From Heterodontus francisci (lineage: Eukaryota): a stretch of 64,000 nucleotides of DNA. The stretch is taken from the NCBI RefSeq assembly GCF_036365525.1, contig NW_027142279.1, positions 248,001 through 312,000 on the forward strand, written 5' to 3'. Of this stretch, positions 16,168 through 63,072 are shown one piece after another. Under the pieces are notes generated by a model. It was not told the origin of the DNA and ran no database searches. It saw nothing but the letters and a program-made list of their open reading frames with translations. The position numbers were made by a program, and so were the translations under genes. Each line of letters opens with the position of its first letter. Position 1 is the first letter of the stretch.

Positions 16168-16218
16168 GTTAATATTTCAGCCAACCAGCACTGCAGTCAA
16201 TCCGCCGTGGTGTATATA
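16168..16218 (+). promoter_or_regulatory. Candidate promoter: HNF1-like site plus TATA box
   Basis: GTTAATATTTCAG (16168-16180; HNF1 consensus GTTAATNATTAAC) and TATATA (16213-16218), about 125 bp upstream of a strong donor. Confidence 0.55.
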
Positions 16219-16244
16219 GGGGTTGGAGCTGTCACTGAGACTGA

Positions 16245-16342
16245 CACTGTTCACAGCAGAGTGGACCCAAGACTGAGGAGCAAGCAGCTGGAACTGAACC
16301 GACAACATCTCTCACCCAGCGACATCTACTTTGGAGACTTTG
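16245..16342 (+). other. Non-coding exon 1 of the uromodulin/GP2-like gene (5' end approximate)
   Basis: Follows the TATA box and ends at donor tg|gtaagc. Confidence 0.6.
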
Positions 16343-16806
16343 GTAAGCAGTCGGGTATGGGAGGACTGTTAGAAAAAGCAAAGGAGTTTGTCACTTGCTA
16401 GGTGTTGACCCAGGGGGTGTGTGTCCTGCTTCTCCTGAAACAACATCATCTTGAGTCATAACCTTAGTCAGAAATTCAAAGAGGTTTGTTTCAGGGATGC
16501 AGGAGACAGACCTGGAGGAGAGAGTCAGGAACACATGTGGTTTATTCATAAAAGCTTTGGAGAGTGGAAAGGGTGAAGGATTGGAGTCAAGTTCCTGATG
16601 TTTAACAAGAACATGTAGCTGAGCTCACCTCTGTCTGTCAGAGCCCCAGTGAGAGAGAGATAATTAGATGGAGCTCACCTATCTAAAACAGATATACTGA
16701 CGAACTCCTCGGCAACTCCCTATTTAATATTCCCTCCAATTCCCTACTCGGTAATCTCTCTCAAATGTTTGTCTTGTGTTTCCCTTTCCAGAATCTCACC
16801 AGTAAG

Positions 16807-16840
16807 ATGTGGACTCTGCTGATCATTCTGAGTTACCTGA
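16807..16840 (+). CDS. Uromodulin/GP2-like D10C protein, signal peptide exon (exon 2 starts 16792)
   Basis: Acceptor tccctttccag| at 16791, aagATG context, MWTLLIILSYL, phase-1 donor A|gtgagt. Confidence 0.8.
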
Positions 16841-16899
16841 GTGAGTAACTTTCATAAAGTTCACCCCCAGTACAACCAGAACAAGCTGTGTTTATTCAA

Positions 16900-20430: not shown

Positions 20431-21842
20431 AAGCTCCATCTGTCCTTTGCTGAACCATTATAACGGCTGCTCAAGTCCTCGAGAAGTCTGTCACATTGGC
20501 AAAAAAACATGAAATCTCTCACTGAGCAACGAACATCTCCCACTGTCAGTATTCAGTATTCACCTGGGGAGTGAGATACCTCATGATATCTCGCACTGAC
20601 CATTGAGTGTCTCTCACTGTCTTTAATCAGTGTTCACCTGGGGACTGAAATACCCCATGATATCTCACACTGACCACCGAGTGTCTCTCACTGTCTGTAC
20701 TCAGTGTTCACCTGGCGACTGAGGTACCCCGTGATATCTCACACTGACGATCGAGCGCCTCTCACTGTCTGTACTCAGTGTACACCAGGGGACTGAGATA
20801 CACCCGATATCTCACACTGACCATCGAGTGTCTCTCACTGTCTGCAGTCAGCGTTCACCTGGGGACTCAGATAGTCCTGATTTCTCACACTGACCATCGA
20901 GTGTCTCTCACTGTCTGTACTCAGTGTTCACCTGGAGATTGAGATACCCCATGACATATCACAATGCCCATCGAGTGTCTCTCACTGCCTGAACTCAGTT
21001 TTAACCAGGGGACAGAGACACCCCATGATATCTCACACTGACAATCGTGTGTCTCTCACTGTCTGTACTCAGTGTTCACCTGGAGATTGAGATACCCCAT
21101 GACACCTCACACTGACCATCAAGTGTCTCTGACTGCGTTTAATCAGTGTCCACCTGGGGAGTGAGATATCCCATGATATCTCACACTGCCCATTGAGTGC
21201 CGCTCACTGTCTTTATTCAGTGTTCATCTGGGGACTGAGATACCCCGTGAACTCTCACACTGACCATCGAATGTCTCTCATTGTCTGTACTTAGTGTTCG
21301 CCTGGAGATTGAGTTACCCCATGATATCTCACACTGACCATCGAATGTCTCTCACTGTCTGTACTCAGTGTTCACCTGGGGACTGAGATACCATAGGATT
21401 TCTCACACTGACCATCGAACATCTCTCACTGTCTGTACTCAGTGCTAACCTGGAGATTGAGTTACCCCATGATATCCCACACTGACCATCGAGTGCCTCC
21501 CACTGTCTGTAACCAGTGTTCACCAGTGGACTGATATACCCCATGATATCTCACACTGACCATCGAGTGTCCCTCACTCTCTGTACTCAGTGTTCACCTG
21601 GGGACTGAGATATCCCTGATTTCACACACTGACAATTGAGTGTCTCTCACTATCTGTACTCAGTGTTCACCCGGGGACTGAGATACCCCATGATATATCG
21701 CACTGACCATCGAGTGTCTCTCACTGTCTTTGCTCACTGCTTATCTGGGGACTGAGATACCCCATGATATCTCACACTGACCATCGAATGTCTCTCACTG
21801 TCTGTTCTCAGTGTTCATCTGGGGACTGAAATATCCCGTGAT

Positions 21843-23306
21843 CCACTGTCCACTGGAGGAGTACCGGATGATTGGAGGGTGGCAAATGTTGTTCCCTTGT
21901 TCAAGAAAGGGAATAGGGATAACCCTGGGAATTATTGACCAGTCAGTCTTCCATCGGTCATGGACAATCATTGGAGAGGATTCTGAGAGACAGGATTTAT
22001 GATTATTTGGAAAAGCATGGTTTGATTAGAGACAGTCAGCATGGCTTTGTGAGGGGCAGGTCATGCCTCACCAGCCTTATTGAACTCTTTGAAGATGTGA
22101 CAAAACACACTGATGAAGGAAGAGTAGTGGATGTGGTGTATATGGATTTTAGCAAGGCGTTTGTTAAGGTTTCCCATGGGAGGCTCATTCGGAAAGTAAG
22201 GAGGTATGGGATTCAGGGAATGTTGGCTCTCTGGATACAAAATTGGCTGGCCCATCGAAGTCAGAGTGTAGTAGTAGATGGAAAGTATTCAGCATGGAGC
22301 TCGCTGACCAGTGGTGTTCCACAAGGATCTGTTCTGGGACCTCTGCTCTTTGTGATTTTTATAAATGACTTGGATGAGGAAGTGGAAGGCTGGGTTAGCA
22401 AGTTTGCCGATGACACGAAGGTTGCTGGAGTTGTGGATAGTGTGGAAGGCTGTTGTAGGTTGCAACGGGACATTGACAGGATGCAGAGCTGGGCTGAGAA
22501 GTGGCAGATGGAGTTCAACATGGAAAAGTGTGAAGTGATTCATTTTGGAAGCTCGAATTTGAATGCAGAATACAGGCTTAAAGACAGGATGCTTGGTAGT
22601 GTGGAGGAACAGAGGGATCTTGGTGTCCATGTCCATAGATAGCTCAAAGTTGCCACCCAAGTTGATGTAGTTGTTAAGAAGGCGTATGGTGTGTTGGCTT
22701 TCATTAACAGGGGGATTGAGTTTAAGAGCCACGAGGTTATGCTGCAGCTATATAAGGCCCTGGTTCGACCACACTTGGAAAATTGTATTCCGTTCTGGTT
22801 GCCTCATTAGAGGAAGGATGTGGATGCTTTAGAGAGGGTGCAGAGGAGATTTACCAGGATGCTGCCTGGACTGGAGGGCATGTCCTACGAAGAAAGATTG
22901 AGGGATCTAGGGCTTTTCTCGTTGGAGCGAAGAAGGATGAGAGTTGACTTGATAGAGGGGTAGAAGATGATGCGAGGCATAGATAGACGGATAGTCAAAG
23001 ACATTTTCCCAGGGTGGAAAGGGCTATCACCAGGGGGCATAATTTTAAGGTCATTGGAGGAGGTTTTGTAGATGTCAGAGGTGGGATCTTTACACAGATA
23101 GTGGTGGGTGCGTGGAATGCACTGCCAGCGGTGGTAGTAGAAGCAGATACATTAGGGGCATTTAAGCGACTCTTGGATAGGTACATCGATGATAGTAGAA
23201 TGAAGAGTGGGCAGTTAGTTTGATCTTAGAGTAGGTTAAATGTTCGGCACAACAACGTGGGCCTAAGGGCCTGTACTGTGCTGTACTGTTCTATGTTCTA
23301 TGTTCT
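21843..23306 (+). mobile_element. 5'-truncated CR1 LINE in satellite, copy 1
   Basis: RT ORF 21935-22642 (GVPQGSVLGP, FADD) with an (ATGTTCT)n tail. Confidence 0.92.
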
Positions 23307-26045
23307 TACGATATCTCACACAGACCATCGAACATCTCTCACTGTCTGGACTGAGAGTTCACCAGGAGACTGTGATAGCCCATGACCTCTCACACTGCCC
23401 GTCGAGTGTCTCTCATTATCTGTATTCAGTGTTCACCCGTGGACTGAGATACCCCATGATATCTCACATTGACCATCGAGTGTCTCTCACTGTCTGTGCT
23501 CAGTGTTCACCTGGGGACTGAGATACCCCATGATATCTCACACTGACCATCGACTGTCTCTCACTGTCTGTCATCAGTGTTCACCTGGGAACTGAAAGTC
23601 GCCATGATATCTCACGCTGTCCATCGAGTGTCACTCACTGTCTGCAATCAGTGTTAACCTGGGGTATAAGATACCCCTGATATCTCACATTGACCATCGA
23701 GTGTCTCTCACTGTCTGTCCTCAGTGTTCACCTGGGACTGAGATACCTCATGATATCTCACATTGACCATCGTGTGTCTCTCTCTCAGTCTGCACTGAGT
23801 GTTAAACAGGGGTCTGAGAAACACCTGATATCTCACACTGACCATCGAGTGTCTCTCACTGTCTGTAATCAGTGTTAACCTGGGGTCTGAGAGACACCAT
23901 GACATCTCACACTGACAATCGACTGTCTCTTAATGTCTGTACTCAGTGTTCACCAGTGGACTGAGATACCCCATGATATCACACACTGACCATCGAGTGT
24001 CTCTCACTGTCTGTACTCATTGTTCACCAAGGGACTGAGATACCCCATGATATCTCACACTGACCATCGAGTGTCCCTCACTGTCTGTACTCAGTGTTCA
24101 ACTGGAGACTGAGATACCCCATGATCTCTCACACTGACCATCGAGTGTCTCTCATTATCTGTTTTCAGTGTTCACCCGGGAATGAAATACCCCATGATCT
24201 CTTACACTGACCATCGAATGTCCCACACTGTCTGTACTCAGTGTTAACCTGGGGACTGAGACAGCCCATGATATCTCACACTGACCATCGAACATCTCTC
24301 ACTGTCTGTACTCAGTGTTCACCTGAAGACTGAGATAGCCCATGATCTCTCAGACAGCCCATCGAGTGTCTCTCATTATCTGTATTCAATGTTCACCCGT
24401 GGACTGAGATACCCCTTAATAGCTCACACTGACCAACGAGTTTCTCTCACTATCTGTACTCAGTGTTCACTTGGGGACTTAGAGACCCCATGATATCTCA
24501 TGCTGACCATCGACTGTCTCTCTCTGTCTGCACTGAGTGTTAAACTGGGATCTGAGATACCCCATGATATCTCACAGTGCCCATCGAGTGTCTCTTAATG
24601 TCTGCACTCAGTGTTCACCAGTGGACTGAGATACCCCATGATATCTCTCACTGACCATAGAGTGCTAATCACTGTCTGTACTCATTGTTCTCCTGGAGAC
24701 TGAAATACCCCATGATATCTCACACTGGCCATCGACTGTCTCTCACTGTCTGTAATCAGTGTTCACCTGGGGACTGAGAGTGCCCATGATATCTCACGCT
24801 GTTCATCGAGTGTCTCTCACTGTCTTTAATCAGTGTTCACCTGGGAACTGAAATACCCCATGATATCTCACACTGACCACCGAGTGTCTCTCACTGTCTG
24901 TACTCAGTGTTCACCTGGCGACTGAGATACCCCGTGATATCTCACACTGACGATCGAGCGCCTCTCACTGTCTGTACTCAGTGTACACCAGGGGACTGAG
25001 ATACACCCGATATCTCACACTGACCATCGAGTGTCTCTCACTGTCTGCAGTCAGCGTTCACCTGGGGACTCAGATAGTCCTGATTTCTCACACTGACCAT
25101 CGAGTGTCTCTCACTGTCTGTACTCAGTGTTCACCTGGAGATTGAGATACCCCATGACATATCACAATGCCCATCGAGTGTCTCTCACTGCCTGAACTCA
25201 GTTTTAACCAGGGGACAGAGACACCCCATGATATCTCACACTGACAATCGTGTGTCTCTCACTGTCTGTACTCAGTGTTCACCTGGAGATTGAGATACCC
25301 CATGACACCTCACACTGACCATCAAGTGTCTCTGACTGCGTTTAATCAGTGTCCACCTGGGGAGTGAGATACCCCATGATATCTCACACTGCCCATTGAG
25401 TGCCGCTCACTGTCTTTATTCAGTGTTCATCTGGGGACTGAGATACCCCGTGAACTCTCACACTGACCATCGAATGTCTCTCATTGTCTGTACTTAGTGT
25501 TCGCCTGGAGATTGAGTTACCCCATGATATCTCACACTGACCATCGAATGTCTCTCACTGTCTGTACTCAGTGTTCACCTGGGGACTGAGATACCATAGG
25601 ATTTCTCACACTGACCATCGAACATCTCTCACTGTCTGTACTCAGTGCTAACCTGGAGATTGAGTTACCCCATGATATCCCACACTGACCATCGAGTGCC
25701 TCCCACTGTCTGTAACCAGTGTTCACCAGTGGACTGATATACCCCATGATATCTCACACTGACCATCGAGTGTCCCTCACTCTCTGTACTCAGTGTTCAC
25801 CTGGGGACTGAGATATCCCTGATTTCACACACTGACAATTGAGTGTCTCTCACTATCTGTACTCAGTGTTCACCCGGGGACTGAGATACCCCATGATATA
25901 TCGCACTGACCATCGAGTGTCTCTCACTGTCTTTGCTCACTGCTTATCTGGGGACTGAGATACCCCATGATATCTCACACTGACCATCGAATGTCTCTCA
26001 CTGTCTGTTCTCAGTGTTCATCTGGGGACTGAAATATCCCGTGAT

Positions 26046-27509
26046 CCACTGTCCACTGGAGGAGTACCGGATGATTGGAGGGTGGCAAATGTTGTTCCCT
26101 TGTTCAAGAAAGGGAATAGGGATAACCCTGGGAATTATTGACCAGTCAGTCTTCCATCGGTCATGGACAATCATTGGAGAGGATTCTGAGAGACAGGATT
26201 TATGATTATTTGGAAAAGCATGGTTTGATTAGAGACAGTCAGCATGGCTTTGTGAGGGGCAGGTCATGCCTCACCAGCCTTATTGAACTCTTTGAAGATG
26301 TGACAAAACACACTGATGAAGGAAGAGTAGTGGATGTGGTGTATATGGATTTTAGCAAGGCGTTTGTTAAGGTTTCCCATGGGAGGCTCATTCGGAAAGT
26401 AAGGAGGTATGGGATTCAGGGAATGTTGGCTCTCTGGATACAAAATTGGCTGGCCCATCGAAGTCAGAGTGTAGTAGTAGATGGAAAGTATTCAGCATGG
26501 AGCTCGCTGACCAGTGGTGTTCCACAAGGATCTGTTCTGGGACCTCTGCTCTTTGTGATTTTTATAAATGACTTGGATGAGGAAGTGGAAGGCTGGGTTA
26601 GCAAGTTTGCCGATGACACGAAGGTTGCTGGAGTTGTGGATAGTGTGGAAGGCTGTTGTAGGTTGCAACGGGACATTGACAGGATGCAGAGCTGGGCTGA
26701 GAAGTGGCAGATGGAGTTCAACATGGAAAAGTGTGAAGTGATTCATTTTGGAAGCTCGAATTTGAATGCAGAATACAGGCTTAAAGACAGGATGCTTGGT
26801 AGTGTGGAGGAACAGAGGGATCTTGGTGTCCATGTCCATAGATAGCTCAAAGTTGCCACCCAAGTTGATGTAGTTGTTAAGAAGGCGTATGGTGTGTTGG
26901 CTTTCATTAACAGGGGGATTGAGTTTAAGAGCCACGAGGTTATGCTGCAGCTATATAAGGCCCTGGTTCGACCACACTTGGAAAATTGTATTCCGTTCTG
27001 GTTGCCTCATTAGAGGAAGGATGTGGATGCTTTAGAGAGGGTGCAGAGGAGATTTACCAGGATGCTGCCTGGACTGGAGGGCATGTCCTACGAAGAAAGA
27101 TTGAGGGATCTAGGGCTTTTCTCGTTGGAGCGAAGAAGGATGAGAGTTGACTTGATAGAGGGGTAGAAGATGATGCGAGGCATAGATAGACGGATAGTCA
27201 AAGACATTTTCCCAGGGTGGAAAGGGCTACCACCAGGGGGCATAATTTTAAGGTCATTGGAGGAGGTTTTGTAGATGTCAGAGGTGGGATCTTTACACAG
27301 ATAGTGGTGGGTGCGTGGAATGCACTGCCAGCGGTGGTAGTAGAAGCAGATACATTAGGGGCATTTAAGCGACTCTTGGATAGGTACATCGATGATAGTA
27401 GAATGAAGAGTGGGCAGTTAGTTTGATCTTAGAGTAGGTTAAATGTTCGGCACAACAACGTGGGCCTAAGGGCCTGTACTGTGCTGTACTGTTCTATGTT
27501 CTATGTTCT
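26046..27509 (+). mobile_element. 5'-truncated CR1 LINE in satellite, copy 2 (duplicated with flanks)
   Basis: Nearly identical to 21843-23306 at an offset of 4203 bp. Confidence 0.92.
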
Positions 27510-30500
27510 TACGATATCTCACACAGACCATCGAACATCTCTCACTGTCTGGACTGAGAGTTCACCAGGAGACTGTGATAGCCCATGACCTCTCACACTG
27601 CCCGTCGAGTGTCTCTCATTATCTGTATTCAGTGTTCACCCGTGGACTGAGATACCCCATGATATCTCACATTGACCATCGAGTGTCTCTCACTGTCTGT
27701 GCTCAGTGTTCACCTGGGGACTGAGATACCCCATGATATCTCACACTGACCATCGACTGTCTCTCACTGTCTGTCATCAGTGTTCACCTGGGAACTGAAA
27801 GTCGCCATGATATCTCACGCTGTCCATCGAGTGTCACTCACTGTCTGCAATCAGTGTTAACCTGGGGTATAAGATACCCCTGATATCTCACATTGACCAT
27901 CGAGTGTCTCTCACTGTCTGTCCTCAGTGTTCACCTGGGACTGAGATACCTCATGATATCTCACATTGACCATCGTGTGTCTCTCTCTCAGTCTGCACTG
28001 AGTGTTAAACAGGGGTCTGAGAAACACCTGATATCTCACACTGACCATCGAGTGTCTCTCACTGTCTGTAATCAGTGTTAACCTGGGGTCTGAGAGACAC
28101 CATGACATCTCACACTGACAATCGACTGTCTCTTAATGTCTGTACTCAGTGTTAACCTGGGGTCTGAGACACCCCATGATACCTCACACTGACCATCGAC
28201 TGTCTCTTAATGTCTGTACTCAGTGTTCACCAGTGGACTGAGATACCCCATGATATCACACACTGACCATCGAGTGTCTCTCACTGTCTGTACTCATTGT
28301 TCACCAGGGGACTGAGATACCCCATGATATCTCACACTGACCATCGAGTGTCCCTCACTGTCTGTACTCAGTGTTCAACTGGAGACTGAGATACCCCATG
28401 ATCTCTCACACTGACCATCGAGTGTCTCTCATTATCTGTTTTCAGTGTTCACCCGGGAATGAAATACCCCATGATCTCTCACACTGACCATCGAATGTCC
28501 CACACTGTCTGTACTCAGTGTTAACCTGGGGACTGAGACAGCCCATGATATCTCACACTGACCATCGAACATCTCTCACTGTCTGTACTCAGTGTTCACC
28601 TGAAGACTGAGATAGCCCATGATCTCTCAGACAGCCCATCGAGTGTCTCTCATTATCTGTATTCAATGTTCACCCGTGGACTGAGATACCCCTTAATAGC
28701 TCACACTGACCAACGAGTTTCTCTCACTATCTGTACTCAGTGTTCACTTGGGGACTTAGAGACCCCATGATATCTCATGCTGACCATCGACTGTCTCTCT
28801 CTGTCTGCACTGAGTGTTAAACTGGGATCTGAGATACCCCATGATATCTCTCACTGACCATAGAGTGCTAATCACTGTCTGTACTCATTGTTCTCCTGGA
28901 GACTGAAATACCCCATGATATCTCACACTGGCCATCGACTGTCTCTCACTGTCTGTAATCAGTGTTCACCTGGGGACTGAGAGTGCCCATGATATCTCAC
29001 GCTGTTCATCGAGTGTCACTCACTGTCTGCAATCAGTGTTAACCTGGGACTGAGATACCTCATGATATCTCATATTGACCATCGTGTGTCTCTCACCGTC
29101 TGTGCTCAGTGTTCATCTGGGGACTGAGATACCCCTGATATATCAGTTTGAAAATCGAGTGTCTCTCACAGTCTGTACTCAGTGTTCACACGGTGACTGA
29201 GATACCCTGTGATATCTCACACTGACCATCCAACATCGTCTACTGTCCGTACTCAGTGTTCACCTTGGGACTGAGATAGCAAATGATATCTCACACTGAC
29301 CATCGAGTGTCTCTCACTGTCTGTACTCAGTGTTCACCTGGGGAATGAGATGCCCCATTATATCTCACACTGACCATCGAGTGTCTCTCACTGTCTGTAC
29401 TCAGTGTTCTCTTGTAGACTGAGATACCCTTTGATATCTCACTCAGACCATCGAACATATCTCGCTTTCTGTATACAGTGTTCACCTGGGGACTGAGATT
29501 CCCCATATTATCCCACACTGACCATCGACTGTGTCTCACTGTCTGTACTCAGTGTTCACCAGTGGACTGAGATACCGCATGATATCTCACACTGACCAGT
29601 GAACATCTCTCACTGTCTGTACTCAGTGTTTCCCTGGAGACTGAGATACCCCCTGATATCTCACACTGACCATCGAGTGCCTCTCATTGTCTGTACTCAG
29701 TGTTCACCTGGGGACTGAGATGCCCCATGATCTCTCAGACTGCCCATCGAGTGTCTCTCATTATCTGTATTCAGTGTTCACCCGTGGACTGAGATACCCC
29801 ACGATACCTCACACTGACCATCGAGTTCCTCTCACTGTCTGTACTCAGTGTTCACCTGGGGACAGAGGTACCTCATGATATCTCATACTGACCATCGAGT
29901 TCCTCTCACTGTCTGTGCTCAGTGTTCACTTGGGGACTGATAGACCCCATGATATCTGGCGCTGACCATCAACTTTCTCTCACTGTCTGCACTCAGTGTT
30001 CACCTGGGGACTGAGATACCCCATGATATCTCAAACTGATCATCGAACATCTCTCACTGTCTGTATTCAGTGTTCTGCAGTGGACTGACATACCCCATGA
30101 TATCTCACATTGACCATGGACTGTCTCTCTCTGTCTGTACTCAGTGTACACCTGGAGACTGAAATCGCCCATGATCTCTCTCACTGCCCATCCAGTGTCT
30201 CTCATTATCTGCATTCAAGGTTCACCCGTGGACTGAGATACCCCGTGATAACTCACACTGAGCATCGACTGTCTCTCACTGTCTGTACTCAGCGTTCACC
30301 TGGGAATGAGATACCACATGATATCTCACATTGACAATCGTGTGTCTCTCACTGACTGTCCTCAGTGATCACCTGGGGACTGAGATACCCCTAATATATC
30401 ACATTGAAAATCGAGTGTTTCTCAATGTCTGTACTCAGTGTTCACCTCTAGACTGAGATTCCCCATGATATCTCATACTGACTATCGAGTGTCTCTCACT

Positions 30501-33500
30501 GTCTGTACTCAGTGTTCACCTGGGGACTGAGCGTCCTCATGATATCTCACGTCGTCCATCGAGTGTCCCTCACTGTCTGCAATCAGTGTTAACCTGGGGA
30601 ATGAGATACCCCTGATATCCCACTTTGACCATCGTGTGTCTCTCACTGCCTGTGCTCAGTGTTCACCTGGTGACTGAGATACCCCTGATATCTCACACTG
30701 ACCATCGAGTGTGTCTCACTGTCTGTACTCAGTGTCAACCTGGGACTGAGACACCCAGTGATATCTCACACCGACCTTCGAGTGTCTCTCACTGTCAGTA
30801 CTCAGTGTTCACGCGGGGAATGAGATACCCCCTGATATCTCACACTGACCATCGAGTGTCTCTCACTTTCTGTACTCAGTGTTCCCTTGTAGACTGAGAT
30901 ACAGCTTGATATGCAACGCAGACCATCGAACATTTCTCACTGTCTGTGCACTGTGTGCACCTGGGGACTGAGATACCCCATGATATCTCATACTGACCAT
31001 CGACTGTCTCTCACTGTTTGTGCACAGTGTTCACCAGTGGATTGAGATACCCCATGATATCTCACATTGACCATTGAACATTTCTCACTGTCTGTAATCA
31101 GTGTTCACCGGGGACTGAGATACCACATGATATCTCACATTGACAATCGTGTGTCTCTCACTGTCTGTGCTCAGTGTTCACCTGGTGACTGAGATACTCC
31201 GTGATATCTCACACTGACATTCGAACTTCTCTCACTCTCCGTACTCAGTGTTCCCTTGTAGACTGAGATACACCTTGATATGCAACGCAGACCATCGAAC
31301 ATTTCTCACTGTCTGTAATCAGTGTTCACCTGGGGACTGAGATACCCCTGATATCTCACACTGACCGTCGAGTGTCTCTCATTGTCTGTACTCAGTGTTC
31401 ACCAGGGAATGAGATACCACATGATATCTCACATTGACAATCGTGTGTCTCTCACTGTCTGTGCTCAGTGTTCACCTGGTGACTGAGATACTCCGTGATA
31501 TCTCACACTGTCCATCGAGTGTCTCTCACTGTCTGTAATCAGTGTTCACCTGGGGACTGAGATACCCCTGATATCTCACACTCACCGTCGAGTGTCTCTC
31601 ACTGTCTGTACTCAGTGTTCACCTGGTGACTGAGATACTCCGTGATATCTCACACTGACCATCGAGTGTCTCTCACTCTCCGTACTCAGTGTTCCCCTCG
31701 GAACTGAGATAACCCATGATATCTCAAAATACCCAACGAGTGCCTCTCACTGCCTGTAATCAGTGTTCACCTGGGACTGAGATGCCCCATGATATCTCAT
31801 ACTGACCATCGAGTGACTCTCACTGTCTTTACTTCGTGTTCAGCCGTGGACTGAGATACCGCATGATATCTCACAATGACCATCGAATGTCTCTCACTGT
31901 CTGTACTCAGAGTTCACCTGCGGACTGAAATACCCCATGATATCTCTCACATACAATCGAGTGACTCTCACTGTCTTTACTTCGTGTTCAGCCGTGGACT
32001 GAGATACCCCATGATATCTCACACTGACCATCGAGTGTCTCTCACTGTCAGTACTCAGTTTTCACCCGGGGACTGAGATACCCCATGATATCGCACACAG
32101 ATCATCGAACATATCGCACTGTCTGTAATCAGTGTTCACCTGCGGACTGAGATACTCCATGATATCTCACTCTGACCATAGAATGCCTCTCACTGTCTGT
32201 ACTCAGTGTTAACCTAGAGACTGAGATACACCATGATATCTCACACTGACCATCGATTGTCTCTCACTGTCTGTACTCAGTGTTGCCTTGTGGACTGAGA
32301 TCCCCGTGATATCTCACACAGACCATCGACTGTCTCTCACTGTCTGTAATCAGTGTTCACCTGGGGACTGAGAGTCCCCATGATATTTCACGTTGTCCAT
32401 CGAGTGTCACTCACAGTCTGCAATCGGTGTTAACCTGGGGTCTGAGATACCCCTGCTATCTCACATTGACCATCGAGTGTCTCTCACTGTCTGTACTCAG
32501 TGTTCACCGGGGACTGAAATACCCATGATATCTCACGCTGACCATCGAGTGTCTCTCACTGTCTGAACTCAGTGTTCTCTTGTGGACTGCGATTCCCCTT
32601 GATATCTCGGACAGACCATCGAACATATCTCACTGTCTGTACACAGAGTTCCCCTGGGGACTGAGCTACCCCATGATATCTCAGACTGACCATCGATTGT
32701 CTCTCACTGTCTGTACTCAGTGTTTACCAGTGGACTGAGATACCCCATGATATCTCACACTGACCATTGAACATCTCCCACTGTCTGTACTCAGTGTTCA
32801 CCCGGGGACTGTGATACCCCATGATATCTCAGACTGACCATCGAGTGTCTCTCAATGTCTGTACTCAGTGTTCTCTTGGGGACTGAGATACCCATGATGT
32901 CTCACACTGACCATCGAACATCTCTCACTGTCTGTACTCAGTGCTTACACGATAACTGAGATACACCATGATATCTCACACTGACCATCGAGTGTCTCTC
33001 ACTGTCTGTACTCAGTGTTCTCTTGTCCACTGAGATACCCCGTGACATCTCACACAGACAATCGAACATATCTCACTGTCTTTACTCAGTGTTCACCTGC
33101 GGACTGAGATGCCCCATGATATCACACCCTAACCATAGAGTGCCTCTCACTGTCCGTACTCATTGTTCACTTGGGGACTGAGATACCCCGTGATATCTCA
33201 CACTGACCATCGAGTGTCTCTCACTGTCTGTACTCAGTGTTAACACGGGAACTGAGATGCCCCATGATATCACACACTGACCATCGCGTGTCTCTCACTG
33301 TCTGTACTCAGTGTTCACCTCGAGACTGAGGTACCCCGGGATATCTCACACAGACCATCGAGTGTCTCTCACTGTCTGTATTCAGTGTTCACCTGGGGAT
33401 TGAGGTACCCCATGATGTCTGACACTGCCCATCGAGTGTCTCTCACTGTCTGTAGTCAGTGTTCTCTTGTCCACTGAGATAACCCTTGATATCTCTCACT

Positions 33501-35796: not shown

Positions 35797-35941
35797 TCAC
35801 AGACTCCGCAAACACTGACCCGTGTGTAAATCACACAGTCCTGGACCAGCCCTGGAGGAGCATCGATTGTACTGAGACTGAGTGCTCCGGGCAGAAGAAG
35901 TGTGATACAAATCTTGTTCAAGGGTGGTACAGATTTAAAAG
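35797..35941 (+). CDS. D10C cassette 1, exon a
   Basis: ctcag|...|gtaact. ITDSANTDPCVNHTVLDQPWRSIDCTETECSGQKKCDTNLVQGWYRFK carries the DPC/WRS/CD/GWYRF motifs of the UMOD/GP2 D8C domain. An alternative in-frame acceptor would start the exon at 35803. Confidence 0.9.
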
Positions 35942-50630: not shown

Positions 50631-50669
50631 ATATCACATATTAACATTAAACATCTTTCTGTCACTCAG

Positions 50670-50802
50670 TCACAGACTCCGCACTCACTGACCCGTGTGT
50701 ACATCACACAGTCCTGGACCAGCCCTGGAGGAGCATCGATTCTACTGAAACTCAGTGGAAGTGTGATGATGGTCTTCACTTCGGATGGTACAGATTTAAA
50801 AG
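50670..50802 (+). CDS. D10C cassette 2, exon a
   Basis: ctcag|...|gtaatg. VTDSALTDPCVHHTVLDQPWRSIDSTETQWKCDDGLHFGWYRFK. Confidence 0.9.
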
Positions 50803-50954: not shown

Positions 50955-51031
50955 TTCTGGTGGATGGAAGATTCCAGAAACTAGCGTACCAGTGTATCAC
51001 TGCTCCACAGCAAGCCCAGGCTGGTTACAAG
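50955..51031 (+). CDS. D10C cassette 2, exon b
   Basis: tttcag|...|gtattg. SSGGWKIPETSVPVYHCSTASPGWLQ. Confidence 0.9.
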
Positions 51032-51125: not shown

Positions 51126-51287
51126 GTTCCCATCCCAGTGTGGGACAGGGGGTCGTAACGAGGACGGTTTGTTTTAACTGGGGTGGAAATCACTGCTACT
51201 GGACCCATGAGATTAGGATCAAAAACTGCAGCAGTTACTTCGTTTATGAGTTGAAGTCGTTATTTTACTGCATTGCTTATTGTACTG
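51126..51287 (+). CDS. D10C cassette 2, exon c
   Basis: tttcag|...|gtacgt. GSHPSVGQGVVTRTVCFNWGGNHCYWTHEIRIKNCSSYFVYELKSLFYCIAYCT. Confidence 0.92.
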
Positions 51288-51690: not shown

Positions 51691-51786
51691 ATCCAGAGAC
51701 TGTCGCAACTGAGGAACCCGAGGAACAATCAACTCGAGAATCCGCTAGAGGATCATCGTCTACCCCAGCGGTGTCTGGAACATCAG
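51691..51786 (+). CDS. Acidic Ser/Thr repeat exon 1 (96 nt, phase 1-1)
   Basis: tttattacag|...|gtatcc. DPETVATEEPEEQSTRESARGSSSTPAVSGTS. Confidence 0.85.
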
Positions 51787-52831: not shown

Positions 52832-52927
52832 AATCCGTGATGTCCAAAACTCAGGAATCCGAGGAACAATCGACTGCAGAATCCACTGAGGGTCCATCCT
52901 CTATCCCAGCGGGCTCTGGAAGCTCAG
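52832..52927 (+). CDS. Acidic Ser/Thr repeat exon 2
   Basis: ttattacag|...|gtatct. ESVMSKTQESEEQSTAESTEGPSSIPAGSGSS. Confidence 0.85.
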
Positions 52928-52954
52928 GTATCTGCCTTGTGGGGTTATCATCGC

Positions 52955-54690: not shown

Positions 54691-56209
54691 GCACACACTG
54701 TGACGCCTGAAGTGCTCAGTCTCAGAGACCCATCCAGTCTCTTACTGGAGTGTGGGGCAATGATAGAGGGCAGTGGGATATAGTGACTGAGGGCAGTGGG
54801 ATGTATTGACTGAGGGGAGTGTGATGTATTTACTGAGGGGAGTGGGATTCAGTGACTGAGGGGAGAGTGATGTAGTGACTGAGGGCAGTGGGACATAGTG
54901 ACTGAGGGGAGTGGGATGTATTGACTGAGGGGAGTGGGATTCAGTGACTGAGGGGAGAGTGATGTAGTGACTGAGGGCATTGGGACATAGTGACTGAGGG
55001 GAGTGGGATGTAGTGACTGAGGGGAGACGGATGTAGTGACTGAGGGGAGAGGGATGCAGTTACCGAGGGGAGTGGGATATAGTGACTGAGGGCAGTGGAA
55101 CATAGCGACTGAAGGCAGTGGGATATAGTGACTGAAGGGAGATGGATGCAGTGACTGAGGGCAGTGGGATGTAGTGACTGAGGGGGGTGGGACGTAGTAA
55201 CTGAGGGAAGTGCGATTTAGTGACTCAGGGGAGTACAATTTAGTGACTGAAGGGAGTGGGATGTATTGACTGAGTGGAGTGGGATGTGGTAACTGAGGGG
55301 AGTGGGATGCAGGGACTGAGGGGAGTGTGATACAGTGACTGAGGGAAGTGTGATACAGTGACTGAGGGGAGTGTGATACAGAGACTGAGGAGAATGTGAT
55401 ACAGAGACTGAGGAGAATGTGATACAGTGACTGAGGGGAGTGTGATACAGAGACTGAGGAGAATGTGATACAGTGACTGTGGGGAGTGGAATACAGTGAC
55501 TGAGGGCAGAGGGACATAGTGACTGAAGGGAGTGGGTTGCAGTGACTGAGGCCAGTGGGATGTAGTCACTGAGGTGGGTGGGACGGAGTGACTGAGGGCA
55601 GTGGGATTTATTGACTTAGGGGAGTGGGATTTAGTGACTGAGGAGAGTGGGCAGTAGTGACTGAGGGGAGAGGGATGTAGTGACTGAGGGAGACGGACAT
55701 AGTGACTGAGGGGAGTGGGTTGTAATGACTGAGGGGAGTGGCATCCAGTGACTGAGAGGAGAGGGATGCAGTGACCGAGGGGAGTGGGATGTTGTCACTG
55801 AGGGGAGTGAGACGTAGTGAATGAGGGCAGTGGGATATAGTGACTGAGGGGAGAGGGATGTAGTGACTGAAGGGAGTGGGATGTATTGACTGAGCGGAGT
55901 GGGATACAGTGACTGAGGAGAGTGGGATACAGTGACTGAGGAGAGTGGGATAGAGTGAAGGAAGGGAGTGTGAAACAGAGACTGAGGGGAGTGTGATACA
56001 GTGACTGAAGGGAGTGTGACACAGTGACTGAGGGGAATGTGATACAGTGACTGAAGGGAGTGTGATACAGTAATGTGGTGAACAGGATGGACGATTTTGG
56101 TTTTATAAAGACTGGTATCTGACATTCTCCTGACACTAGTACCATCCTGCTGACCTGTTGTGTTTTTCTCCATGTCTCACTCTGCAATGTCTGCCTCCCT
56201 TTATTACAG

Positions 56210-56305
56210 AACCCGTGACTTCCCAATCTCAGGAATACGAGGAACAATCGACTGCAGAATCCACTGAGGGTCCATCCTCTATCCCAGCGGGCTCTGGAAG
56301 CTCAG
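56210..56305 (+). CDS. Acidic Ser/Thr repeat exon 3
   Basis: ttattacag|...|gtacct. EPVTSQSQEYEEQSTAESTEGPSSIPAGSGSS. Confidence 0.85.
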
Positions 56306-58818: not shown

Positions 58819-58914
58819 AACCCGTGACTTCCCAAACTCAGGAATCCGAGGAACAATCGACTCGAGAATCTACTGAGGTTTCATCCTCCACCCCAGCGGG
58901 CTCTGGAAGCTCAG
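58819..58914 (+). CDS. Acidic Ser/Thr repeat exon 4
   Basis: ttattacag|...|gtacct. EPVTSQTQESEEQSTRESTEVSSSTPAGSGSS. Confidence 0.85.
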
Positions 58915-60656
58915 GTACCTGTCTTGTGGGGTCATCATCGCAGAATCATGGAATCAGAGACTGGTTACAGCACAGAAAGAGCCCGTTGAGCCCATCGTCA
59001 CTGTGACAGCTCCATGCCTGTGCAACTCACCTACTCCCACTCCTGCTATTTCCCCGTCGCACTGCAGATTGTTTCGCCAATGACAATTTTCCAATTCCCT
59101 TTTGAAAGCCTCAATTGAACCTACCTCCAGCACACTCTCAGGCAGTGCATTTCAGATCCTAACCACACGCTGTGTGAAAAGGTTTTACTGTCTCTGTTGT
59201 AATTTTTACCACTCACCTAAAACCGGTGCCCTCTAGTTCTGGATCCTCCCACCAATGGGACATAGGGGTGTGGGGCATAGTTACTGGGGGAGAGGGATGT
59301 AGTGACTGAGGGGAGAAGGTTGCACTGACCGAGGTGAGTGGGATATAGTGACTGAGGGCAGTGGGACATTGTGACTGAGGGCAGTGGGATATAGTGAGTG
59401 AGGGGAGAGGGATGTAGTGACTGAGGGGAGAAGGTTGCACTGACCGAGGTGAGTGGGATATAGTGACTGAGGGCAGTGGGACATTGTGACTGAGGGCAGT
59501 GGGATATAGTGAGTGAGGGGAGAGGGATGTAGTGACTGAGGGGAGTGGGACATAGTGACTTAGGGTAGTGGGATATAGTGAGTGAGGGGAGTGGGACATA
59601 GTGACTGAGGGGAGTGGGACATAGTGACTGAGGGGAGTGGGATGTAGTTACTGAGGGCAGCTGGACATAGTGATTGAGGGCAGTGGGATGTCGTGACTGA
59701 GGGGAGTGAGACATAGTGAATGAGGGGAGTGGGATATAGTGAGTGAGGGGAGAGGGATATAGTGAGTGAGGGGAGAGTGATATAGTGACTGAGGGGAGTG
59801 GGACATAATGACTGAGGGGAGTGGGATGTAGTTACTGAGGGCAGTAGGACATAGTGATTGAGGGCAGTGGGAAATAGTCATCGAGGTGTGCGGAACATAG
59901 TGACTGAGGGCAGTGGGACATAATGAATGAGGACAGTGGGACATATTGTCTGAGGGCAGAGGGATATAGTCATTGTGGGGAGTGGGATATAGTCATTGGG
60001 GGCAGTGGGACATAGTGACTGAGGGCAGTGGAACATAGTGACTTAGGTCAGTGGGATATAGTCATTGAGGGGAGTGGGACATAGTCATTGAGGGCAGTGG
60101 GACATAGTCACTGAGGTGAGTGTGATATAGTGACTGATGGGATAGGTATGCAGTGATTGAGGGCAGTGGGATATAGTGACTGAGGGCAGTGGTATGTATT
60201 CACTGCACGGAGTGGGATGTGGTAGCTGCGGAGAGTGGGATGCAGTGACTGAGGTGAGTGGGATACAGTGACTGAGGGGAGTGGGATACAGCGACTGAGG
60301 GTAGTATGATACAGTGACTGAGGGGAGTGTGATACAGTGTCTGAGGGGAGTATGATACAGTCACTGGGGGAGTGTGATGCAGAGACTGAGGGTAGTGTGA
60401 TCCAGTGACAGAGGGAGTGTGAAACAGTGACAGAGGGGAGTGTGATGCAGTGACTGAGGGGAGTGTGATGGAGACTGAGGGGAGCGTGACGCCGTGACTG
60501 AGGGGAGTGTGACATAGTAATGTAGTGAACAGGATGGAAGATAATGGTTTTATAAAGATTGTTATCTGTCATTCTCCTCACACGAGCACCATCCTGTTGA
60601 CCTGATGTGTTTTTCTCCATGTCTCACTTTGCAATGTCTCCCTCCATTTATAACAG

Positions 60657-60752
60657 AACCCGTGACTTCCAAAACTCAGGAATCCGAGGAACAATCGACC
60701 AGAGAATCTACTGAGGTTTCATCCTCCACCCCAGCGGGCTCTGGAAGCTCAG
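60657..60752 (+). CDS. Acidic Ser/Thr repeat exon 5
   Basis: ttataacag|...|gtacct. EPVTSKTQESEEQSTRESTEVSSSTPAGSGSS. Confidence 0.8.
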
Positions 60753-62976
60753 GTACCTGTCTTGTGGGGTCATCATCGCAGAATCATGGTATCAGAGACT
60801 GGTTACAGCACAGGAAGAGGCCATTGAGCCCATCGTCACCGTGACAGCTCTATGCCTGTGCAACTCACCTACTGCCACTCGGGCCATTTCCCCGTCGCAC
60901 TGCAGATTTTTTCTGCCATGACAATTTTCCAATTCTCTTTTGAAAGCCTCAATTAAACCTGCCTCCAGCACACTCTCAGGCAGTGCATTTCAGATCCTAA
61001 CCACACGCTGTGTGAAAAGATTTTCCTGTCTCTGTTGTGACTTTTACCACGAACCTAAAACCGGTGCCCTCTAGTTCTGGATCCTCGCACCAATGGGACT
61101 GAGGGGAGTGGGACATAGTTACTGAGGGGAGAGGGATGCATTGACTGAGGGGAGAAGGTTGCACTGACCGAGGGCAGTGGGATATAGTGACTGAGGGAAG
61201 TGGGACATAGTGACTGAGGGCAGTGGGATATAGTGAGTGAGGGGAGAGTGATGTAGTGACTGAGGGGAGTGGGACATAGTGACTGAGGGGAGTGGGATGT
61301 AGTGACTGAGGGAAGTTGGACATAGTGATTGAGGGCAGTGGGATGTAGTGACTGAGGGGAGTGAGACATAGTGAATGAGGGGAGAGGGATATAGTGACTG
61401 TGGGGAGTGGGACAAAGTGACTGAGGGGTGTGGGATATAGTTATTGAGGGCAGTAGGACATAGTGATTGAGCGCAGTGGGATATAGTCAGTGAGGGGCGA
61501 GGGATATAGTGACTGAGGGGAGTGGGACATAGTGACTGAGGACAGTGGGACATAGTGACTGAGGGCAGTGGGATATAGTCATTGAGGGCAGTGGGATATA
61601 GTCATTGAGGGCAGTGGGACACAGTGACTGAGGGCAATGGTACATAGTGACTGAGGGCAGAGGGACATAGTGACTGAGGTGAGTGGGACATAGTCACTGA
61701 GGTGAGTGGGATATAGTCATTGAGGACAGTGGGACATAGTGACTGAGGGCAGTGGGATACAGTGAGTGAGGGGAGAGGGATATAGTGACTGTGGGGAGTG
61801 GGACAAAGTGACTGAGGGGAGTTGGATTTAGTTACTGAGGGCAGTAGGACATAGTGATTGCGCGCAGTGGGATATAGTCATTGAGGGCAGTAGGACATAG
61901 TGACTGAAGGCAGTGGGATATAGTGACTGAGGGCTGTGGGACATAGTGATTGAGGGGAGTGGGACATAGTCACTGAGGTGAGTGGGATATAGTGACTGAG
62001 GGCTGGGGGACATAGTGATTGAGGGGAGTGGGACATAGTCACTGAGGTGAGTGTGATACAGTGACTGAGGGGAATGTGATACAGTGACTGAGGGGAGTGT
62101 GATACAATGACAGAGGAAGTGTGATACAGTGACAGAGTGGAGTCTGACACAGTGAGTGAGGGGAGTGTGATACAGTGACTGAGGGGAGTGTGATGCAGTA
62201 CAGAGGGAAGTGTGATACTGTGACTGAGCGAGTGTGACACAGTGACTGAGGGGAGTGTGATACAGTGTCTGAGGGGAGTGTGATACAGTGTCTGAGGGGA
62301 GTGCGATACAGTGACTGAGGGGAATGTGATACATGACTGAGGGGAGTGTGATACAGAGTCTGAGGGGAGTATGAAACAGTGACTGAGGGGAGTGTGATGG
62401 AGTGACTCAAGGACTGTGATACAGTGTCTGAGGGGAGTAGGATACGGTCACTGAGGGGAGTGGGATGCAGCGACTGAGTGTACTGTGACACCGTGACTGA
62501 GGGGAGTATGATACAGTCACTGAGGGGAGTGGAATGCAGCGAATGAGGGTAGTGTGATCGAGTGACTGTGGGGAGTGGAATACATTGACTGAGAGGAATG
62601 TGATATAGTGACTGAGGGAAGTGTGATACAGTGACTGAGAGAGTGTGATGCAGTGACTGAGGGGAGTGTGATGCAGTGACTGAGGTGAGTGTGATACAGT
62701 GACTGAGGTGAGTGGGATACAGTGAGTGAGGGGAGTATGATATTGTGACTGAGGTGAGTGTGATGCAGTGACCGCTGGGAGTGTGATGCAGTGACTGCTG
62801 GGAGTGTGATACAGTGACTGAGGGGAGTGTGACGCAGTAATGTAGTGAACAGGATGGAAGATAATGGTTTTATAAAGATTGTTATCTGTCATTCTCCTGA
62901 CACGAGCACCATCCTGTTGACCTGATGTGTTTTTCTCCATGTCTCACTTTGCAATATCTCCCTCCCTTCAATACAG

Positions 62977-63072
62977 AACCCGTGACTTCCCAAACGCAGG
63001 AATCCGAGGAACAATCAACTAGAGAATCTACTGAGGTTTCATCCTCCACCCCAGCGGGCTCTGGAAGCTCAG
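62977..63072 (+). CDS. Acidic Ser/Thr repeat exon 6
   Basis: ttcaatacag|...|gtacct. EPVTSQTQESEEQSTRESTEVSSSTPAGSGSS. Confidence 0.8.

What the first reader, a model, noticed from the sequence alone, without database searches (positions are those of the whole stretch)
16168..63072. Secreted protein with tandem uromodulin/GP2 decoy (D10C) domains on an exon-amplified acidic stalk
Seen: 13 small coding exons with canonical splice sites and matching phases join into a stop-free frame of about 456 codons. The order is signal peptide, D10C, D10C, then (32-aa S/T/E repeat) x6, and the frame continues past the window. Known: human GP2 and UMOD carry one D10C, followed directly by EGF and a ZP module, and it acts as a glycan decoy for the bacterial adhesin FimH. 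Inference: two divergent D10C heads on a long mucin-like stalk suggest a mucosal or renal pathogen decoy, or an innate receptor, with an architecture I do not recognise from mammals. D8C-containing 'uromodulin-like' genes are common in fish annotations, so the novelty needs testing.
Basis: partly seen in the sequence, partly recalled or inferred. Interest (0 to 1): 0.85.

Follow-up and report, generated by a model that had tools for sequence, protein, structure and literature searches.

The report
Shark secreted tandem-D8C stalk gene
This is a real, intact horn-shark gene, already in RefSeq as an "uncharacterized protein", for a secreted protein with two uromodulin/GP2-type domains on an acidic Ser/Thr stalk built from repeated 96-base exons; it belongs to a large unstudied shark and ray family, so its build is unusual beside mammals but not unique.

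Summary
Thirteen + strand exons with AG/GT borders and matching phases join into exactly 456 stop-free codons. They encode a short signal peptide (ATG at 16807, not 16168), two uromodulin/GP2-type domains of three exons each, and six 96-nt phase-1 exons, each a 32-aa Ser/Thr/Glu repeat. The frame leaves the window at 63072.

The window is from Heterodontus francisci. The gene is RefSeq XP_067884563.1, "uncharacterized protein", identical to my model for its first 316 residues. Beyond the window that product ends in a small Cys-containing tail. It has no EGF, ZP module, TM segment or GPI-type tail.

Both domains pass Pfam D8C_UMOD and model onto the GP2 D10C fold (Z 20.6, rmsd 1.4 Å). Both lack the canonical C3–C6 disulfide and the preceding β-hairpin. 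Domain A has a non-canonical extra Cys pair; domain B has 8 Cys.

About 100 shark, ray and skate proteins share the plan. Tandem D10C is also known from zebrafish omcins, which keep ZP and GPI.

The RNA contigs I could lay show the same exon junctions but come from a paralogue. A decoy function is inferred by homology only.

This scan has already reported the same family on other pieces of this genome. Verdict: a new variant of a known kind, of moderate interest.

The parts
16210..16222 (+). TATA-like motif; a possible promoter for a non-coding first exon that would end at the GTAAGC donor after 16342
   Evidence: Unique match in the window; sequence read. Inferred only, with no transcript evidence.
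16792..16840 (+). Leader exon: ATG at 16807, 11 codons plus 1 base (hydrophobic signal-peptide core), GTGAGT donor, phase 1
   Evidence: Identical to the N-terminus of RefSeq protein P0007. The leader is conserved across the family.
35797..35941 (+). Exon A1: N-terminal third of domain A. Holds C1, the extra Cys pair, C2 and the NHT sequon.
   Evidence: Aligns to GP2 33-67 and UMOD 171-205.
43046..43122 (+). Exon A2: middle of domain A (C4 present; the C3 position is Val)
43217..43381 (+). Exon A3: C-terminal half of domain A (C5, C7, C8, C9, C10)
   Evidence: Pfam PF23283, 30.6 bits against a cut-off of 27. GP2 and UMOD are the best PDB matches.
50670..50802 (+). Exon B1: N-terminal third of domain B. 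The extra Cys pair is lost through a short deletion, and the sequon is lost (HHT).
50955..51031 (+). Exon B2: middle of domain B
51126..51287 (+). Exon B3: C-terminal half of domain B
   Evidence: Pfam PF23283, 30.0 bits. Full-domain alignment to GP2.
51691..51786 (+). Repeat exon R0: 96 nt, phase 1-1, an older diverged copy
   Evidence: A paralogue RNA contig joins a B3-like exon to an R0-like exon, skipping 403 nt, which is the intron length.
52832..52927 (+). Repeat exon R1 (96 nt, phase 1-1). The RefSeq model uses an internal GT donor after its 20th codon.
56210..56305 (+). Repeat exon R2 (96 nt, phase 1-1)
58819..58914 (+). Repeat exon R3 (96 nt, phase 1-1)
60657..60752 (+). Repeat exon R4 (96 nt, phase 1-1)
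62977..63072 (+). Repeat exon R5 (96 nt, phase 1-1). It has a GT donor and the frame stays open, so the gene continues past the window.
   Evidence: The tail of P0007 is not encoded in the window.
20508..35271 (.). Intron filler: a 74-bp satellite array with an embedded duplicated LINE fragment, inside the 19-kb intron between the leader exon and A1
39096..41702 (+). LINE ORF (868 aa) inside the A1-A2 intron
   Evidence: Reverse-transcriptase-like by its sequence motifs; not searched.
54766..56071 (.). 23-bp minisatellite in the intron of the amplified stalk unit. Further arrays lie at 58154-58671, 59264-60518, 61097-62829 and 63417-64000.

Best explanation
This is the horn-shark (Heterodontus francisci) gene behind RefSeq XP_067884563.1. 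It is an intact member of a large, unstudied family found across sharks, rays and skates.

Shown:
- The protein has a short cleavable-type leader and two tandem uromodulin/GP2-type D8C/D10C-fold domains.
- These are followed by an intrinsically disordered, strongly acidic Ser/Thr/Glu stalk. In the window the stalk is 192 aa, 29% Ser, net charge -30, with 14 S-x-E/D motifs and 6 Ser-Gly.
- The stalk is encoded one 32-aa repeat per symmetric 96-nt exon.
- Beyond the window, according to the RefSeq product, comes a roughly 55-aa Cys-containing strand-plus-helix tail.
- There is no EGF, ZP module, TM segment or GPI-type tail.

Inferred:
- The protein is secreted as a soluble glycoprotein.
- The stalk is heavily O-glycosylated and/or phosphorylated or GAG-substituted, and holds the two heads away from the tail.
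- Because every stalk exon is phase 1-1, unit duplication or exon skipping changes stalk length without breaking the frame.
- By homology with UMOD, GP2 and the zebrafish omcins, the heads most likely act in a lumen or on a mucosal surface as glycan-presenting or microbe-binding decoy/agglutinin domains. Here they would work without filament formation.

My odds: real annotated gene of this family, about 0.95. Secreted, ZP-less and anchor-less, about 0.8. Antimicrobial decoy/agglutinin role, about 0.35.
For: Exon structure and frame:
- Exon borders, phases and the 456-codon frame.
- Identity to RefSeq P0007 / XP_067884563.1 over 316 aa, and the species.

Domains:
- Pfam D8C_UMOD hits on single exons (30.6 and 30.0 bits, cut-off 27) and on the whole product (85.7 bits, 2 domains).
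- Sequence matches to the GP2 and UMOD D10C.
- AlphaFold2 model with both heads at pLDDT above 90, residues 274-413 disordered, and the tail at pLDDT 87-94 with a helix at 431-449.
- Fold match to the GP2 decoy module 7p6r: Foldseek TM 0.87, rmsd 1.5 Å; VIA Z 20.6, rmsd 1.4 Å, 125 residues aligned.
- The GP2 N65 position (peptide DPCQNYT, whose oligomannose glycan binds FimH; PMC8930769) aligns with an NHT sequon in domain A.

Family:
- About 100 elasmobranch homologues carry only PF23283. Domain number is variable, the stalks are variable and Ser/Thr-rich, and there are two tail types.
- Four or more paralogues occur in this species.

Selection and expression:
- Stalk exons are better conserved than their flanks, for example R3-R4 at 96.9% against 86-93%.
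- RNA-type contigs show A3-like>B1, B1>..>B3 and B3-like>R0 junctions, and a 96-nt repeat-to-repeat period.

Precedent:
- Zebrafish omcin5 has five D10C domains and protects against bacteria: PMC11415648.
Against: - The spliced contigs carry paralogue-specific letters. The A3-like end reads PPPDCEAVYC, and 50702 C>A turns H into N. Both match P0164/P0165. They show that the family is spliced and transcribed, but not that this locus is.
- The tissue of those runs is unknown.
- The RefSeq model includes only 4 repeat units and one odd internal donor. The true mature stalk length is therefore unknown.
- The beta-hairpin half of the GP2/UMOD decoy module and the C3-C6 disulfide are absent.
- The N65-type sequon is missing from domain B and from most family members.
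- No binding, glycan or expression data exist.
- The 3' end was not seen by me.
Confidence: 0.6

Rival explanations
1. A structural or matrix protein rather than an immune decoy. On this reading the acidic S-x-E / Ser-Gly stalk is a phosphoprotein or proteoglycan core that binds cations or water, for example in a gel, an egg-case or mineralising secretion, or secretory-granule packing. The D8C heads would serve as protein-protein modules.
For: The stalk composition is 29% Ser and 19% Glu, with net charge -30, 14 S-x-E/D motifs and 6 Ser-Gly in 192 aa. The stalk sequence is not conserved between species while its composition is. GP2 itself is a zymogen-granule protein by its name in the PDB entries.
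Against: No match to any matrix, SCPP or proteoglycan family. The only characterised relatives (UMOD, GP2, omcin5) act against bacteria (PMC8930769, PMC11415648). The pattern of rapid lineage-specific duplication fits defence genes better.
Confidence: 0.2
2. A young, redundant paralogue that is silent or decaying. The open frame would simply reflect recent duplication, and the RefSeq model would be a homology-driven prediction.
For: The laid RNA contigs match a paralogue, not this locus. Domain B has lost the family's extra Cys pair and the sequon. The introns are swollen with satellites and LINEs. The RefSeq isoform P0166 reads into apparent intron sequence.
Against: There are 13 exons with intact splice sites and no stop in 456 codons. 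Stalk exons are more conserved than their flanks. dN/dS between the two domains is 0.47, not about 1.
Confidence: 0.12
3. A cell-surface innate receptor: D8C heads on a stalk, anchored by a TM segment or GPI signal encoded further downstream.
For: A head-plus-stalk layout is typical of surface receptors. I could not read the 3' end of the gene.
Against: The RefSeq product and its paralogues end in a soluble tail of about 55 aa with no hydrophobic stretch. None of the roughly 100 relatives has any Pfam domain other than PF23283.
Confidence: 0.05

Closest known systems
Human GP2 and uromodulin (UMOD): D10C 'decoy module' (PDB 7p6r, 6zs5, 9nu1; PMC8930769)
   Same: The domain fold is the same (Z 20.6, rmsd 1.4 Å, 40-45% identity). 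Four of the five disulfide positions are kept (C1-C8, C2-C9, C4-C10, C5-C7). An N-glycan sequon sits at the GP2 N65 position in domain A. The protein has a signal peptide and is secretory.
   Different: There is no beta-hairpin before D10C. C3 and C6 are both absent. There are two heads in tandem. EGF domains, the polymerising ZP module and the GPI anchor are all missing. An acidic exon-repeat stalk and a small tail take their place.
Zebrafish omcins (omc1-15; PMC11415648)
   Same: Several tandem D10C domains in one protein. The genes are clustered and have duplicated rapidly within a lineage.
   Different: Omc5 keeps EGF IV, the ZP module and a predicted GPI anchor. That paper describes the family as teleost-specific. 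The shark proteins share only the D10C part, at 33-38% identity to the characiform multi-D8C proteins, which I did not test for omcin membership.
Predicted elasmobranch proteins named 'uromodulin-like', 'GP2-like', 'OIT3-like', 'mucin-5AC-like' or 'uncharacterized' (e.g. XP_078062394.1 Mustelus, XP_072423510.1 Chiloscyllium, XP_041038352.1 Carcharodon, XP_059815959.1 Hypanus)
   Same: The plan is the same: a conserved leader, 1-5 or more D8C domains with the DCxxTEC extra pair, a Ser/Thr-rich repeat stalk, and one of two small Cys-containing tails.
   Different: The repeat unit sequence, repeat number and domain number differ from gene to gene. This gene's domain B has lost the extra Cys pair. 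Its stalk is unusually acidic.
Secreted mucins and acidic secretory phosphoproteins/proteoglycan cores
   Same: A disordered, Ser/Thr-rich tandem-repeat stalk with S-x-E and Ser-Gly motifs, and one repeat per symmetric exon.
   Different: No sequence relationship was found. Pro is only 7%. There are no VWD, CysD or SEA domains.

Membership tests
Pfam PF23283 D8C_UMOD | Score above the curated gathering threshold (27 bits) | tested here: met
   Exon A3 alone scores 30.6 bits and exon B3 alone 30.0 bits. The whole RefSeq product scores 85.7 bits with two domains.
D10C domain as defined on GP2 (PMC8930769) | The new fold of GP2/UMOD D10C | tested here: met
   The AlphaFold2 heads have pLDDT above 90. 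Foldseek against 7p6r gives TM 0.87, rmsd 1.5 Å. VIA gives Z 20.6, rmsd 1.4 Å with 125 residues aligned. This is a predicted structure, not a solved one.
D10C domain as defined on GP2 (PMC8930769) | Ten Cys forming C1-C8, C2-C9, C3-C6, C4-C10 and C5-C7 | tested here: not met
   In the alignments to GP2, the C3 position (GP2 'ETC') is Val or Ser. Only one Cys remains of the C6-C7 'CC' doublet. This holds in both domains, so the C3-C6 pair is absent. Domain A reaches ten Cys only through an extra pair between C1 and C2. Domain B has 8.
GP2/UMOD bipartite decoy module | A disulfide-stapled beta-hairpin packed against D10C, forming the glycan groove | tested here: not met
   Only about 9 residues lie between the leader and C1 of domain A, and about 8 between C10 of A and C1 of B. 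No Cx-Cy pair is present.
GP2/UMOD bipartite decoy module | A high-mannose N-glycan at UMOD N275 or GP2 N65 that binds FimH | tested here: inconclusive
   An NHT sequon sits at the GP2 N65 position in domain A, while domain B has HHT. The UMOD N275 position carries no sequon. Glycan type and lectin binding are not testable here.
UMOD/GP2/OIT3/omcin ZP-module glycoproteins | EGF domain(s), a polymerising ZP module and a GPI or TM anchor after the D10C | tested here: not met
   The RefSeq product P0007 and 8 relatives carry only PF23283. So do the elasmobranch hits, whereas the frog UMOD hits listed there do show PF00100. The tail ends without a hydrophobic stretch. One caveat: the 3' exons lie outside the window, so this rests on the RefSeq model.
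Elasmobranch ZP-less D8C / stalk / tail family (unnamed) | Conserved leader, D8C with the DCxxTEC pair, a Ser/Thr-rich repeat stalk, and a ct1 or ct2 tail | tested here: met
   The leader and domain A match the family consensus. The ct1 tail is shared with P0164, P0071, P0057, P0063, P0086 and P0020. Of 231 D8C proteins fetched, 47 carry ct1 or ct2.
Mucins | Dense O-glycosylated Pro/Thr/Ser tandem repeats | not testable with these tools
   Composition is S 29%, T 13.5%, P 7% and E 19%, and the stalk is disordered in the model. Glycosylation was not measured.

The most novel reading that the evidence does not exclude
Sharks and rays evolved their own soluble branch of the uromodulin/GP2 defence system, separately from teleosts. 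In it, D10C heads have been freed from the ZP filament. They are displayed instead on acidic stalks whose length is adjusted by duplicating or skipping symmetric exons. The genes multiply together with T-cell-receptor V segments, among which they are interleaved. That would make them a fast-evolving family of mucosal immune effectors, with the small tail as a new attachment or assembly domain.
Probability: 0.3. Interest if true: 0.6.

Novelty: new variant of a known kind. Interest (0 to 1): 0.35.

Why it matters
Uromodulin and GP2 are the textbook case of a host "decoy" that works by forming ZP filaments studded with a glycan bait. A large shark and ray family keeps the bait-bearing fold but drops the beta-hairpin, one disulfide, the filament module and the anchor. 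That raises the question of what the D10C domain does on its own.

If the heads still bind microbes or lectins, the family would give a minimal, soluble, natural version of the decoy. It would also push this defence strategy back to cartilaginous fish, against the published view that multi-D10C genes are a teleost speciality (PMC11415648).

The one-repeat-per-exon stalk is also a clean example of protein length evolving by exon amplification.

This particular locus adds little beyond the paralogues that this scan has already followed up on other pieces of the same genome.

Tried and rejected
Searches were made exon by exon by window reference. After that I used the RefSeq protein that the search itself returned. 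Exons were joined only inside local scripts, for translation and counting.
- The look-up of sequencing runs returned only three small runs of one sample, guessed to be RNA, each holding 3-5% of the words. Their contigs turned out to come from a paralogue, so they are not evidence that this locus is expressed.
- Complex prediction on two copies of the tail (residues 408-472) returned 'no answer' (score 0.01). This is neither support for nor evidence against dimerisation.
- The protein-atlas search on the tail gave one unnamed chordate cluster at 0.80, which is chance level.
- The VIA wide search gave only Z of 3.7 or less for the tail, with generic helix matches. No fold assignment follows, and the tail was not folded alone.
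- Pfam finds nothing in the stalk or the tail.
- Rfam finds nothing in the very abundant repeat at 52140-52487.
- Literature searches pairing uromodulin-like, GP2-like, OIT3 or D8C with shark, skate or elasmobranch found no study of the family. That library does not hold most subscription journals.
- My first scan for a signal exon used strict thresholds and missed it. A relaxed scan found it.
- I considered the ORF at 16141-16401 as the leader and rejected it. It is not hydrophobic and is absent from the RefSeq protein.

Full report
**What is in the sequence**

On the + strand I located twelve short exons by six-frame reading and by self-comparison. Each is bounded by AG and GT.
- Domain A: A1 35797-35941, A2 43046-43122, A3 43217-43381.
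- Domain B: B1 50670-50802, B2 50955-51031, B3 51126-51287.
- Six 96-nt repeat exons: R0 51691-51786, R1 52832-52927, R2 56210-56305, R3 58819-58914, R4 60657-60752, R5 62977-63072.

Each three-exon domain unit starts and ends in phase 1. Inside a unit the borders are phase 2 after exon 1 and phase 1 after exon 2. Every stalk exon is phase 1-1.

A relaxed scan for a leader found exon 16792-16840. Its ATG is at 16807, it has an 11-codon hydrophobic core plus one base, and its donor is GTGAGT. Joined in a local script, the thirteen exons give exactly 456 codons without a stop.

A TATA-like motif at 16210-16222 and a possible non-coding exon ending at 16342 lie there. I could not verify either.

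The introns are large and full of repeats:
- a 74-bp satellite at 20508-35271;
- an 868-aa LINE ORF at 39096-41702;
- 23-bp minisatellites between the stalk exons.

**Identity of the gene**

Exons A3 and B3 each pass Pfam D8C_UMOD (PF23283) on their own, at 30.6 and 30.0 bits against a cut-off of 27. Exons A1, B1 and A3 have human GP2 and uromodulin as their only significant PDB relatives.

An exhaustive HMMER search with exon A3 found 1155 proteins. Among them was P0007 (472 aa), with two matched stretches at 86% identity to the query and its best stretch at residues 87-140, where my model places exon A3.

P0007 is RefSeq XP_067884563.1, "uncharacterized protein [Heterodontus francisci]". It is identical to my window model from the initiator Met through residue 316. 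The window is therefore horn shark, and the gene is already annotated.

The RefSeq model then departs from the simple exon chain:
- It uses an internal GT donor after codon 20 of R1.
- It contains only four repeat units.
- It reads one repeat exon through to a downstream donor.
- It ends in about 80 residues that are not encoded in the window.

P0166 is a second isoform that seems to retain intron sequence.

**The heads**

PMC8930769 defines the GP2 decoy module as a disulfide-stapled beta-hairpin packed against a D10C domain. The D10C has five disulfides: C1-C8, C2-C9, C3-C6, C4-C10 and C5-C7. The FimH-binding oligomannose glycan sits on GP2 N65 (peptide DPCQNYT) or on UMOD N275.

In the HMMER alignments both shark domains keep C1, C2, C4, C5, C7, C8, C9 and C10. 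Both lack C3, where GP2 has 'ETC' and the shark has ETV or ETS. Both also lack one Cys of the C6-C7 doublet. Because C3 and C6 pair with each other, this is the clean loss of one disulfide.

Domain A has two further Cys in an insertion between C1 and C2. The family alignment shows this DCxxTEC pair to be the elasmobranch consensus. Domain B has lost it through a short deletion and has 8 Cys.

There is no room for the beta-hairpin. About nine residues precede C1 of domain A, and about eight link A to B.

Domain A keeps a sequon (NHT) exactly at the GP2 N65 position. Domain B has HHT there. The position is not conserved across the family. A further sequon, NCS, occurs in both domains.

An AlphaFold2 model built on a 66-sequence family alignment gives both heads pLDDT above 90. 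They superpose on the GP2 decoy module with TM 0.87 and rmsd 1.5 Å by Foldseek, and with Z 20.6, rmsd 1.4 Å and 125 residues aligned by VIA. They superpose on UMOD with TM 0.91 and rmsd 1.3 Å.

**The stalk**

The six in-window repeats make 192 residues. Composition is 29% Ser, 19% Glu, 13.5% Thr and 7% Pro, with net charge -30, 14 S-x-E/D motifs and 6 Ser-Gly. The model predicts this stretch to be disordered (residues 274-413).

R1-R5 were amplified as whole units of exon, intron and minisatellite, since their flanks align over 300 nt on each side. R0 shares only the exon.

Exons are consistently more alike than their flanks:
- R1-R2: 93.8% against 87%.
- R3-R4: 96.9% against 86-93%.
- R1-R3: 88.5% against 82-84%.

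This fits constraint on the coding sequence, or gene conversion. It argues against junk. Because all units are phase 1-1, any subset can be spliced in frame. The RefSeq model's four units against at least seven in the genome may reflect this, or may be a modelling artefact.

**The tail**

The RefSeq product ends in a segment of about 55 residues: an extended strand-like stretch, a helix at 431-449 and two Cys, at pLDDT 87-94.

Local phmmer finds this "ct1" tail in other shark and ray D8C proteins. A second type, "ct2", has a similar strand-helix-Cys layout. Of 231 D8C proteins fetched, 47 carry one or the other.

Nothing I tried identifies the tail:
- Pfam finds nothing.
- The protein atlas gives a chance-level hit.
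- VIA gives only Z of 3.7 or less.
- A homodimer test returned no answer.

The tail has no hydrophobic end, so a GPI or TM anchor is unlikely.

**The family**

A word-indexed search with residues 1-266 returned 99 proteins at E of 1e-10 or better. Nearly all come from sharks, rays and skates:
- Heterodontus, Mustelus, Carcharodon, Cetorhinus, Rhincodon;
- Hemiscyllium, Chiloscyllium, Scyliorhinus, Heptranchias, Pristiophorus;
- Hypanus, Hemitrygon, Mobula, Pristis, Amblyraja, Leucoraja, Rhinoraja.

PF23283 is their only Pfam domain. Their source names are "uncharacterized", "uromodulin-like", "GP2-like", "OIT3-like" and "mucin-5AC-like". Horn shark itself has at least four further paralogues.

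More distant multi-D8C proteins occur in characiform fishes, a loach and corals.

The one functional study of a multi-D10C family that I found concerns the zebrafish omcins (PMC11415648). Omc5 has five D10C domains plus EGF IV, a ZP module and a predicted GPI anchor. It is induced by E. coli, and its loss lowers survival. That paper calls the family teleost-specific.

I found no paper on the elasmobranch proteins.

This scan has already noted the same family 36 times in this genome. Two follow-ups on other pieces (s1-872196, s1-872050) reached the same reading as mine: ZP-less, secreted, and lying among TCR V segments.

**Transcript evidence**

Only three small runs of one sample were offered. 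Their contigs, laid on 50400-53000, include forms that skip introns at or near the predicted borders:
- 51282>51686, skipping 403 nt, which is the length of the B3-R0 intron;
- 50802>51125, from the end of B1 to the start of B3, with unaligned letters between;
- a B1-like exon preceded by 31 nt of an A3-like exon end;
- a repeat-to-repeat join with a 96-nt period.

These show that the material is cDNA and that the family uses these junctions. However, the contigs differ from the window at 3-10% of positions, and the differences are paralogue-specific. The A3-like end encodes PPPDCEAVYC, and 50702 C>A turns His into Asn. Both match P0164/P0165.

They are therefore not evidence that this locus is expressed. 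The tissue is unknown.

**Most likely function**

Shown: an intact gene for a leader-bearing protein with two D10C-fold heads, a disordered acidic stalk and a small tail, and without ZP, EGF or an anchor.

Inferred: it is secreted, its stalk is heavily modified, and the heads act in a lumen or on a mucosal surface. By homology with UMOD, GP2 and omcin5, the best single guess is a soluble glycan-presenting or microbe-binding decoy/agglutinin, at odds of about 0.35. The weaknesses are the missing hairpin and groove, the missing disulfide and the non-conserved sequon.

Rivals:
- an acidic matrix, phosphoprotein or proteoglycan-core role (0.2);
- a silent young paralogue (0.12);
- an anchored receptor (0.05).

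**Verdict**

The locus is a new variant of a known kind, a ZP-less D10C protein, at the level of the literature. It is already predicted in RefSeq, it is one of many similar genes, and this scan has reported the family before. Interest is moderate (0.35).

Noticed in passing
window 1871-2311 (-) and 6198-6878 (-): Two immunoglobulin V-set gene segments lie upstream of the gene on the opposite strand (Pfam PF07686, E 8e-10 and 1e-10; YYCA-type ends). Earlier notes place a further V segment 27 kb past the window. The D8C gene therefore sits inside a TCR V array, as its paralogues do elsewhere in this genome.
   Followed up: partly
window 43046-43381 versus 50955-51287: Exons 2 and 3 of the two head units are less alike (79% and 81%) than the intron between them (91.5%) and their flanks (84-86%). 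Across the whole domain dN/dS is 0.47 with dS 0.36. The excess therefore includes synonymous change. That points to conversion from other paralogues at least as much as to diversifying selection.
   Followed up: partly
window 52832-52927 and the RefSeq product P0007: The RefSeq model leaves R1 at an internal GT after codon 20 and holds only 4 repeat units, against 6 in the window plus at least one beyond it. All units are phase 1-1, so stalk-length isoforms by exon skipping are possible. Equally, the model may be wrong.
   Followed up: partly
window 52140-52487: This is an interspersed repeat with summed contig depth above 2x10^5 in the three RNA-type runs, carried by hundreds of contigs at 90-95% identity. 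It has no Rfam match. It is probably a transcribed SINE-like element.
   Followed up: partly
window 20778-24300 versus 24981-28500: This is a near-identical 4.2-kb segmental duplication inside the first long intron. It carries the same 235-aa reverse-transcriptase fragment, embedded in the 74-bp satellite (the ORF lists repeat at an offset of 4203).
   Followed up: no
window 39096-41702 (+): An 868-aa open LINE ORF sits in the A1-A2 intron. By its sequence motifs it looks like an endonuclease plus reverse transcriptase. It may be a young element.
   Followed up: no
window 4561-5267 and 11370-13518: A 38-bp tandem array lies at 4561-5267. Both stretches also hold Gln/Thr/Asn-rich ORFs that look like low-complexity repeat translations between the V segments and the gene.
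   Followed up: no
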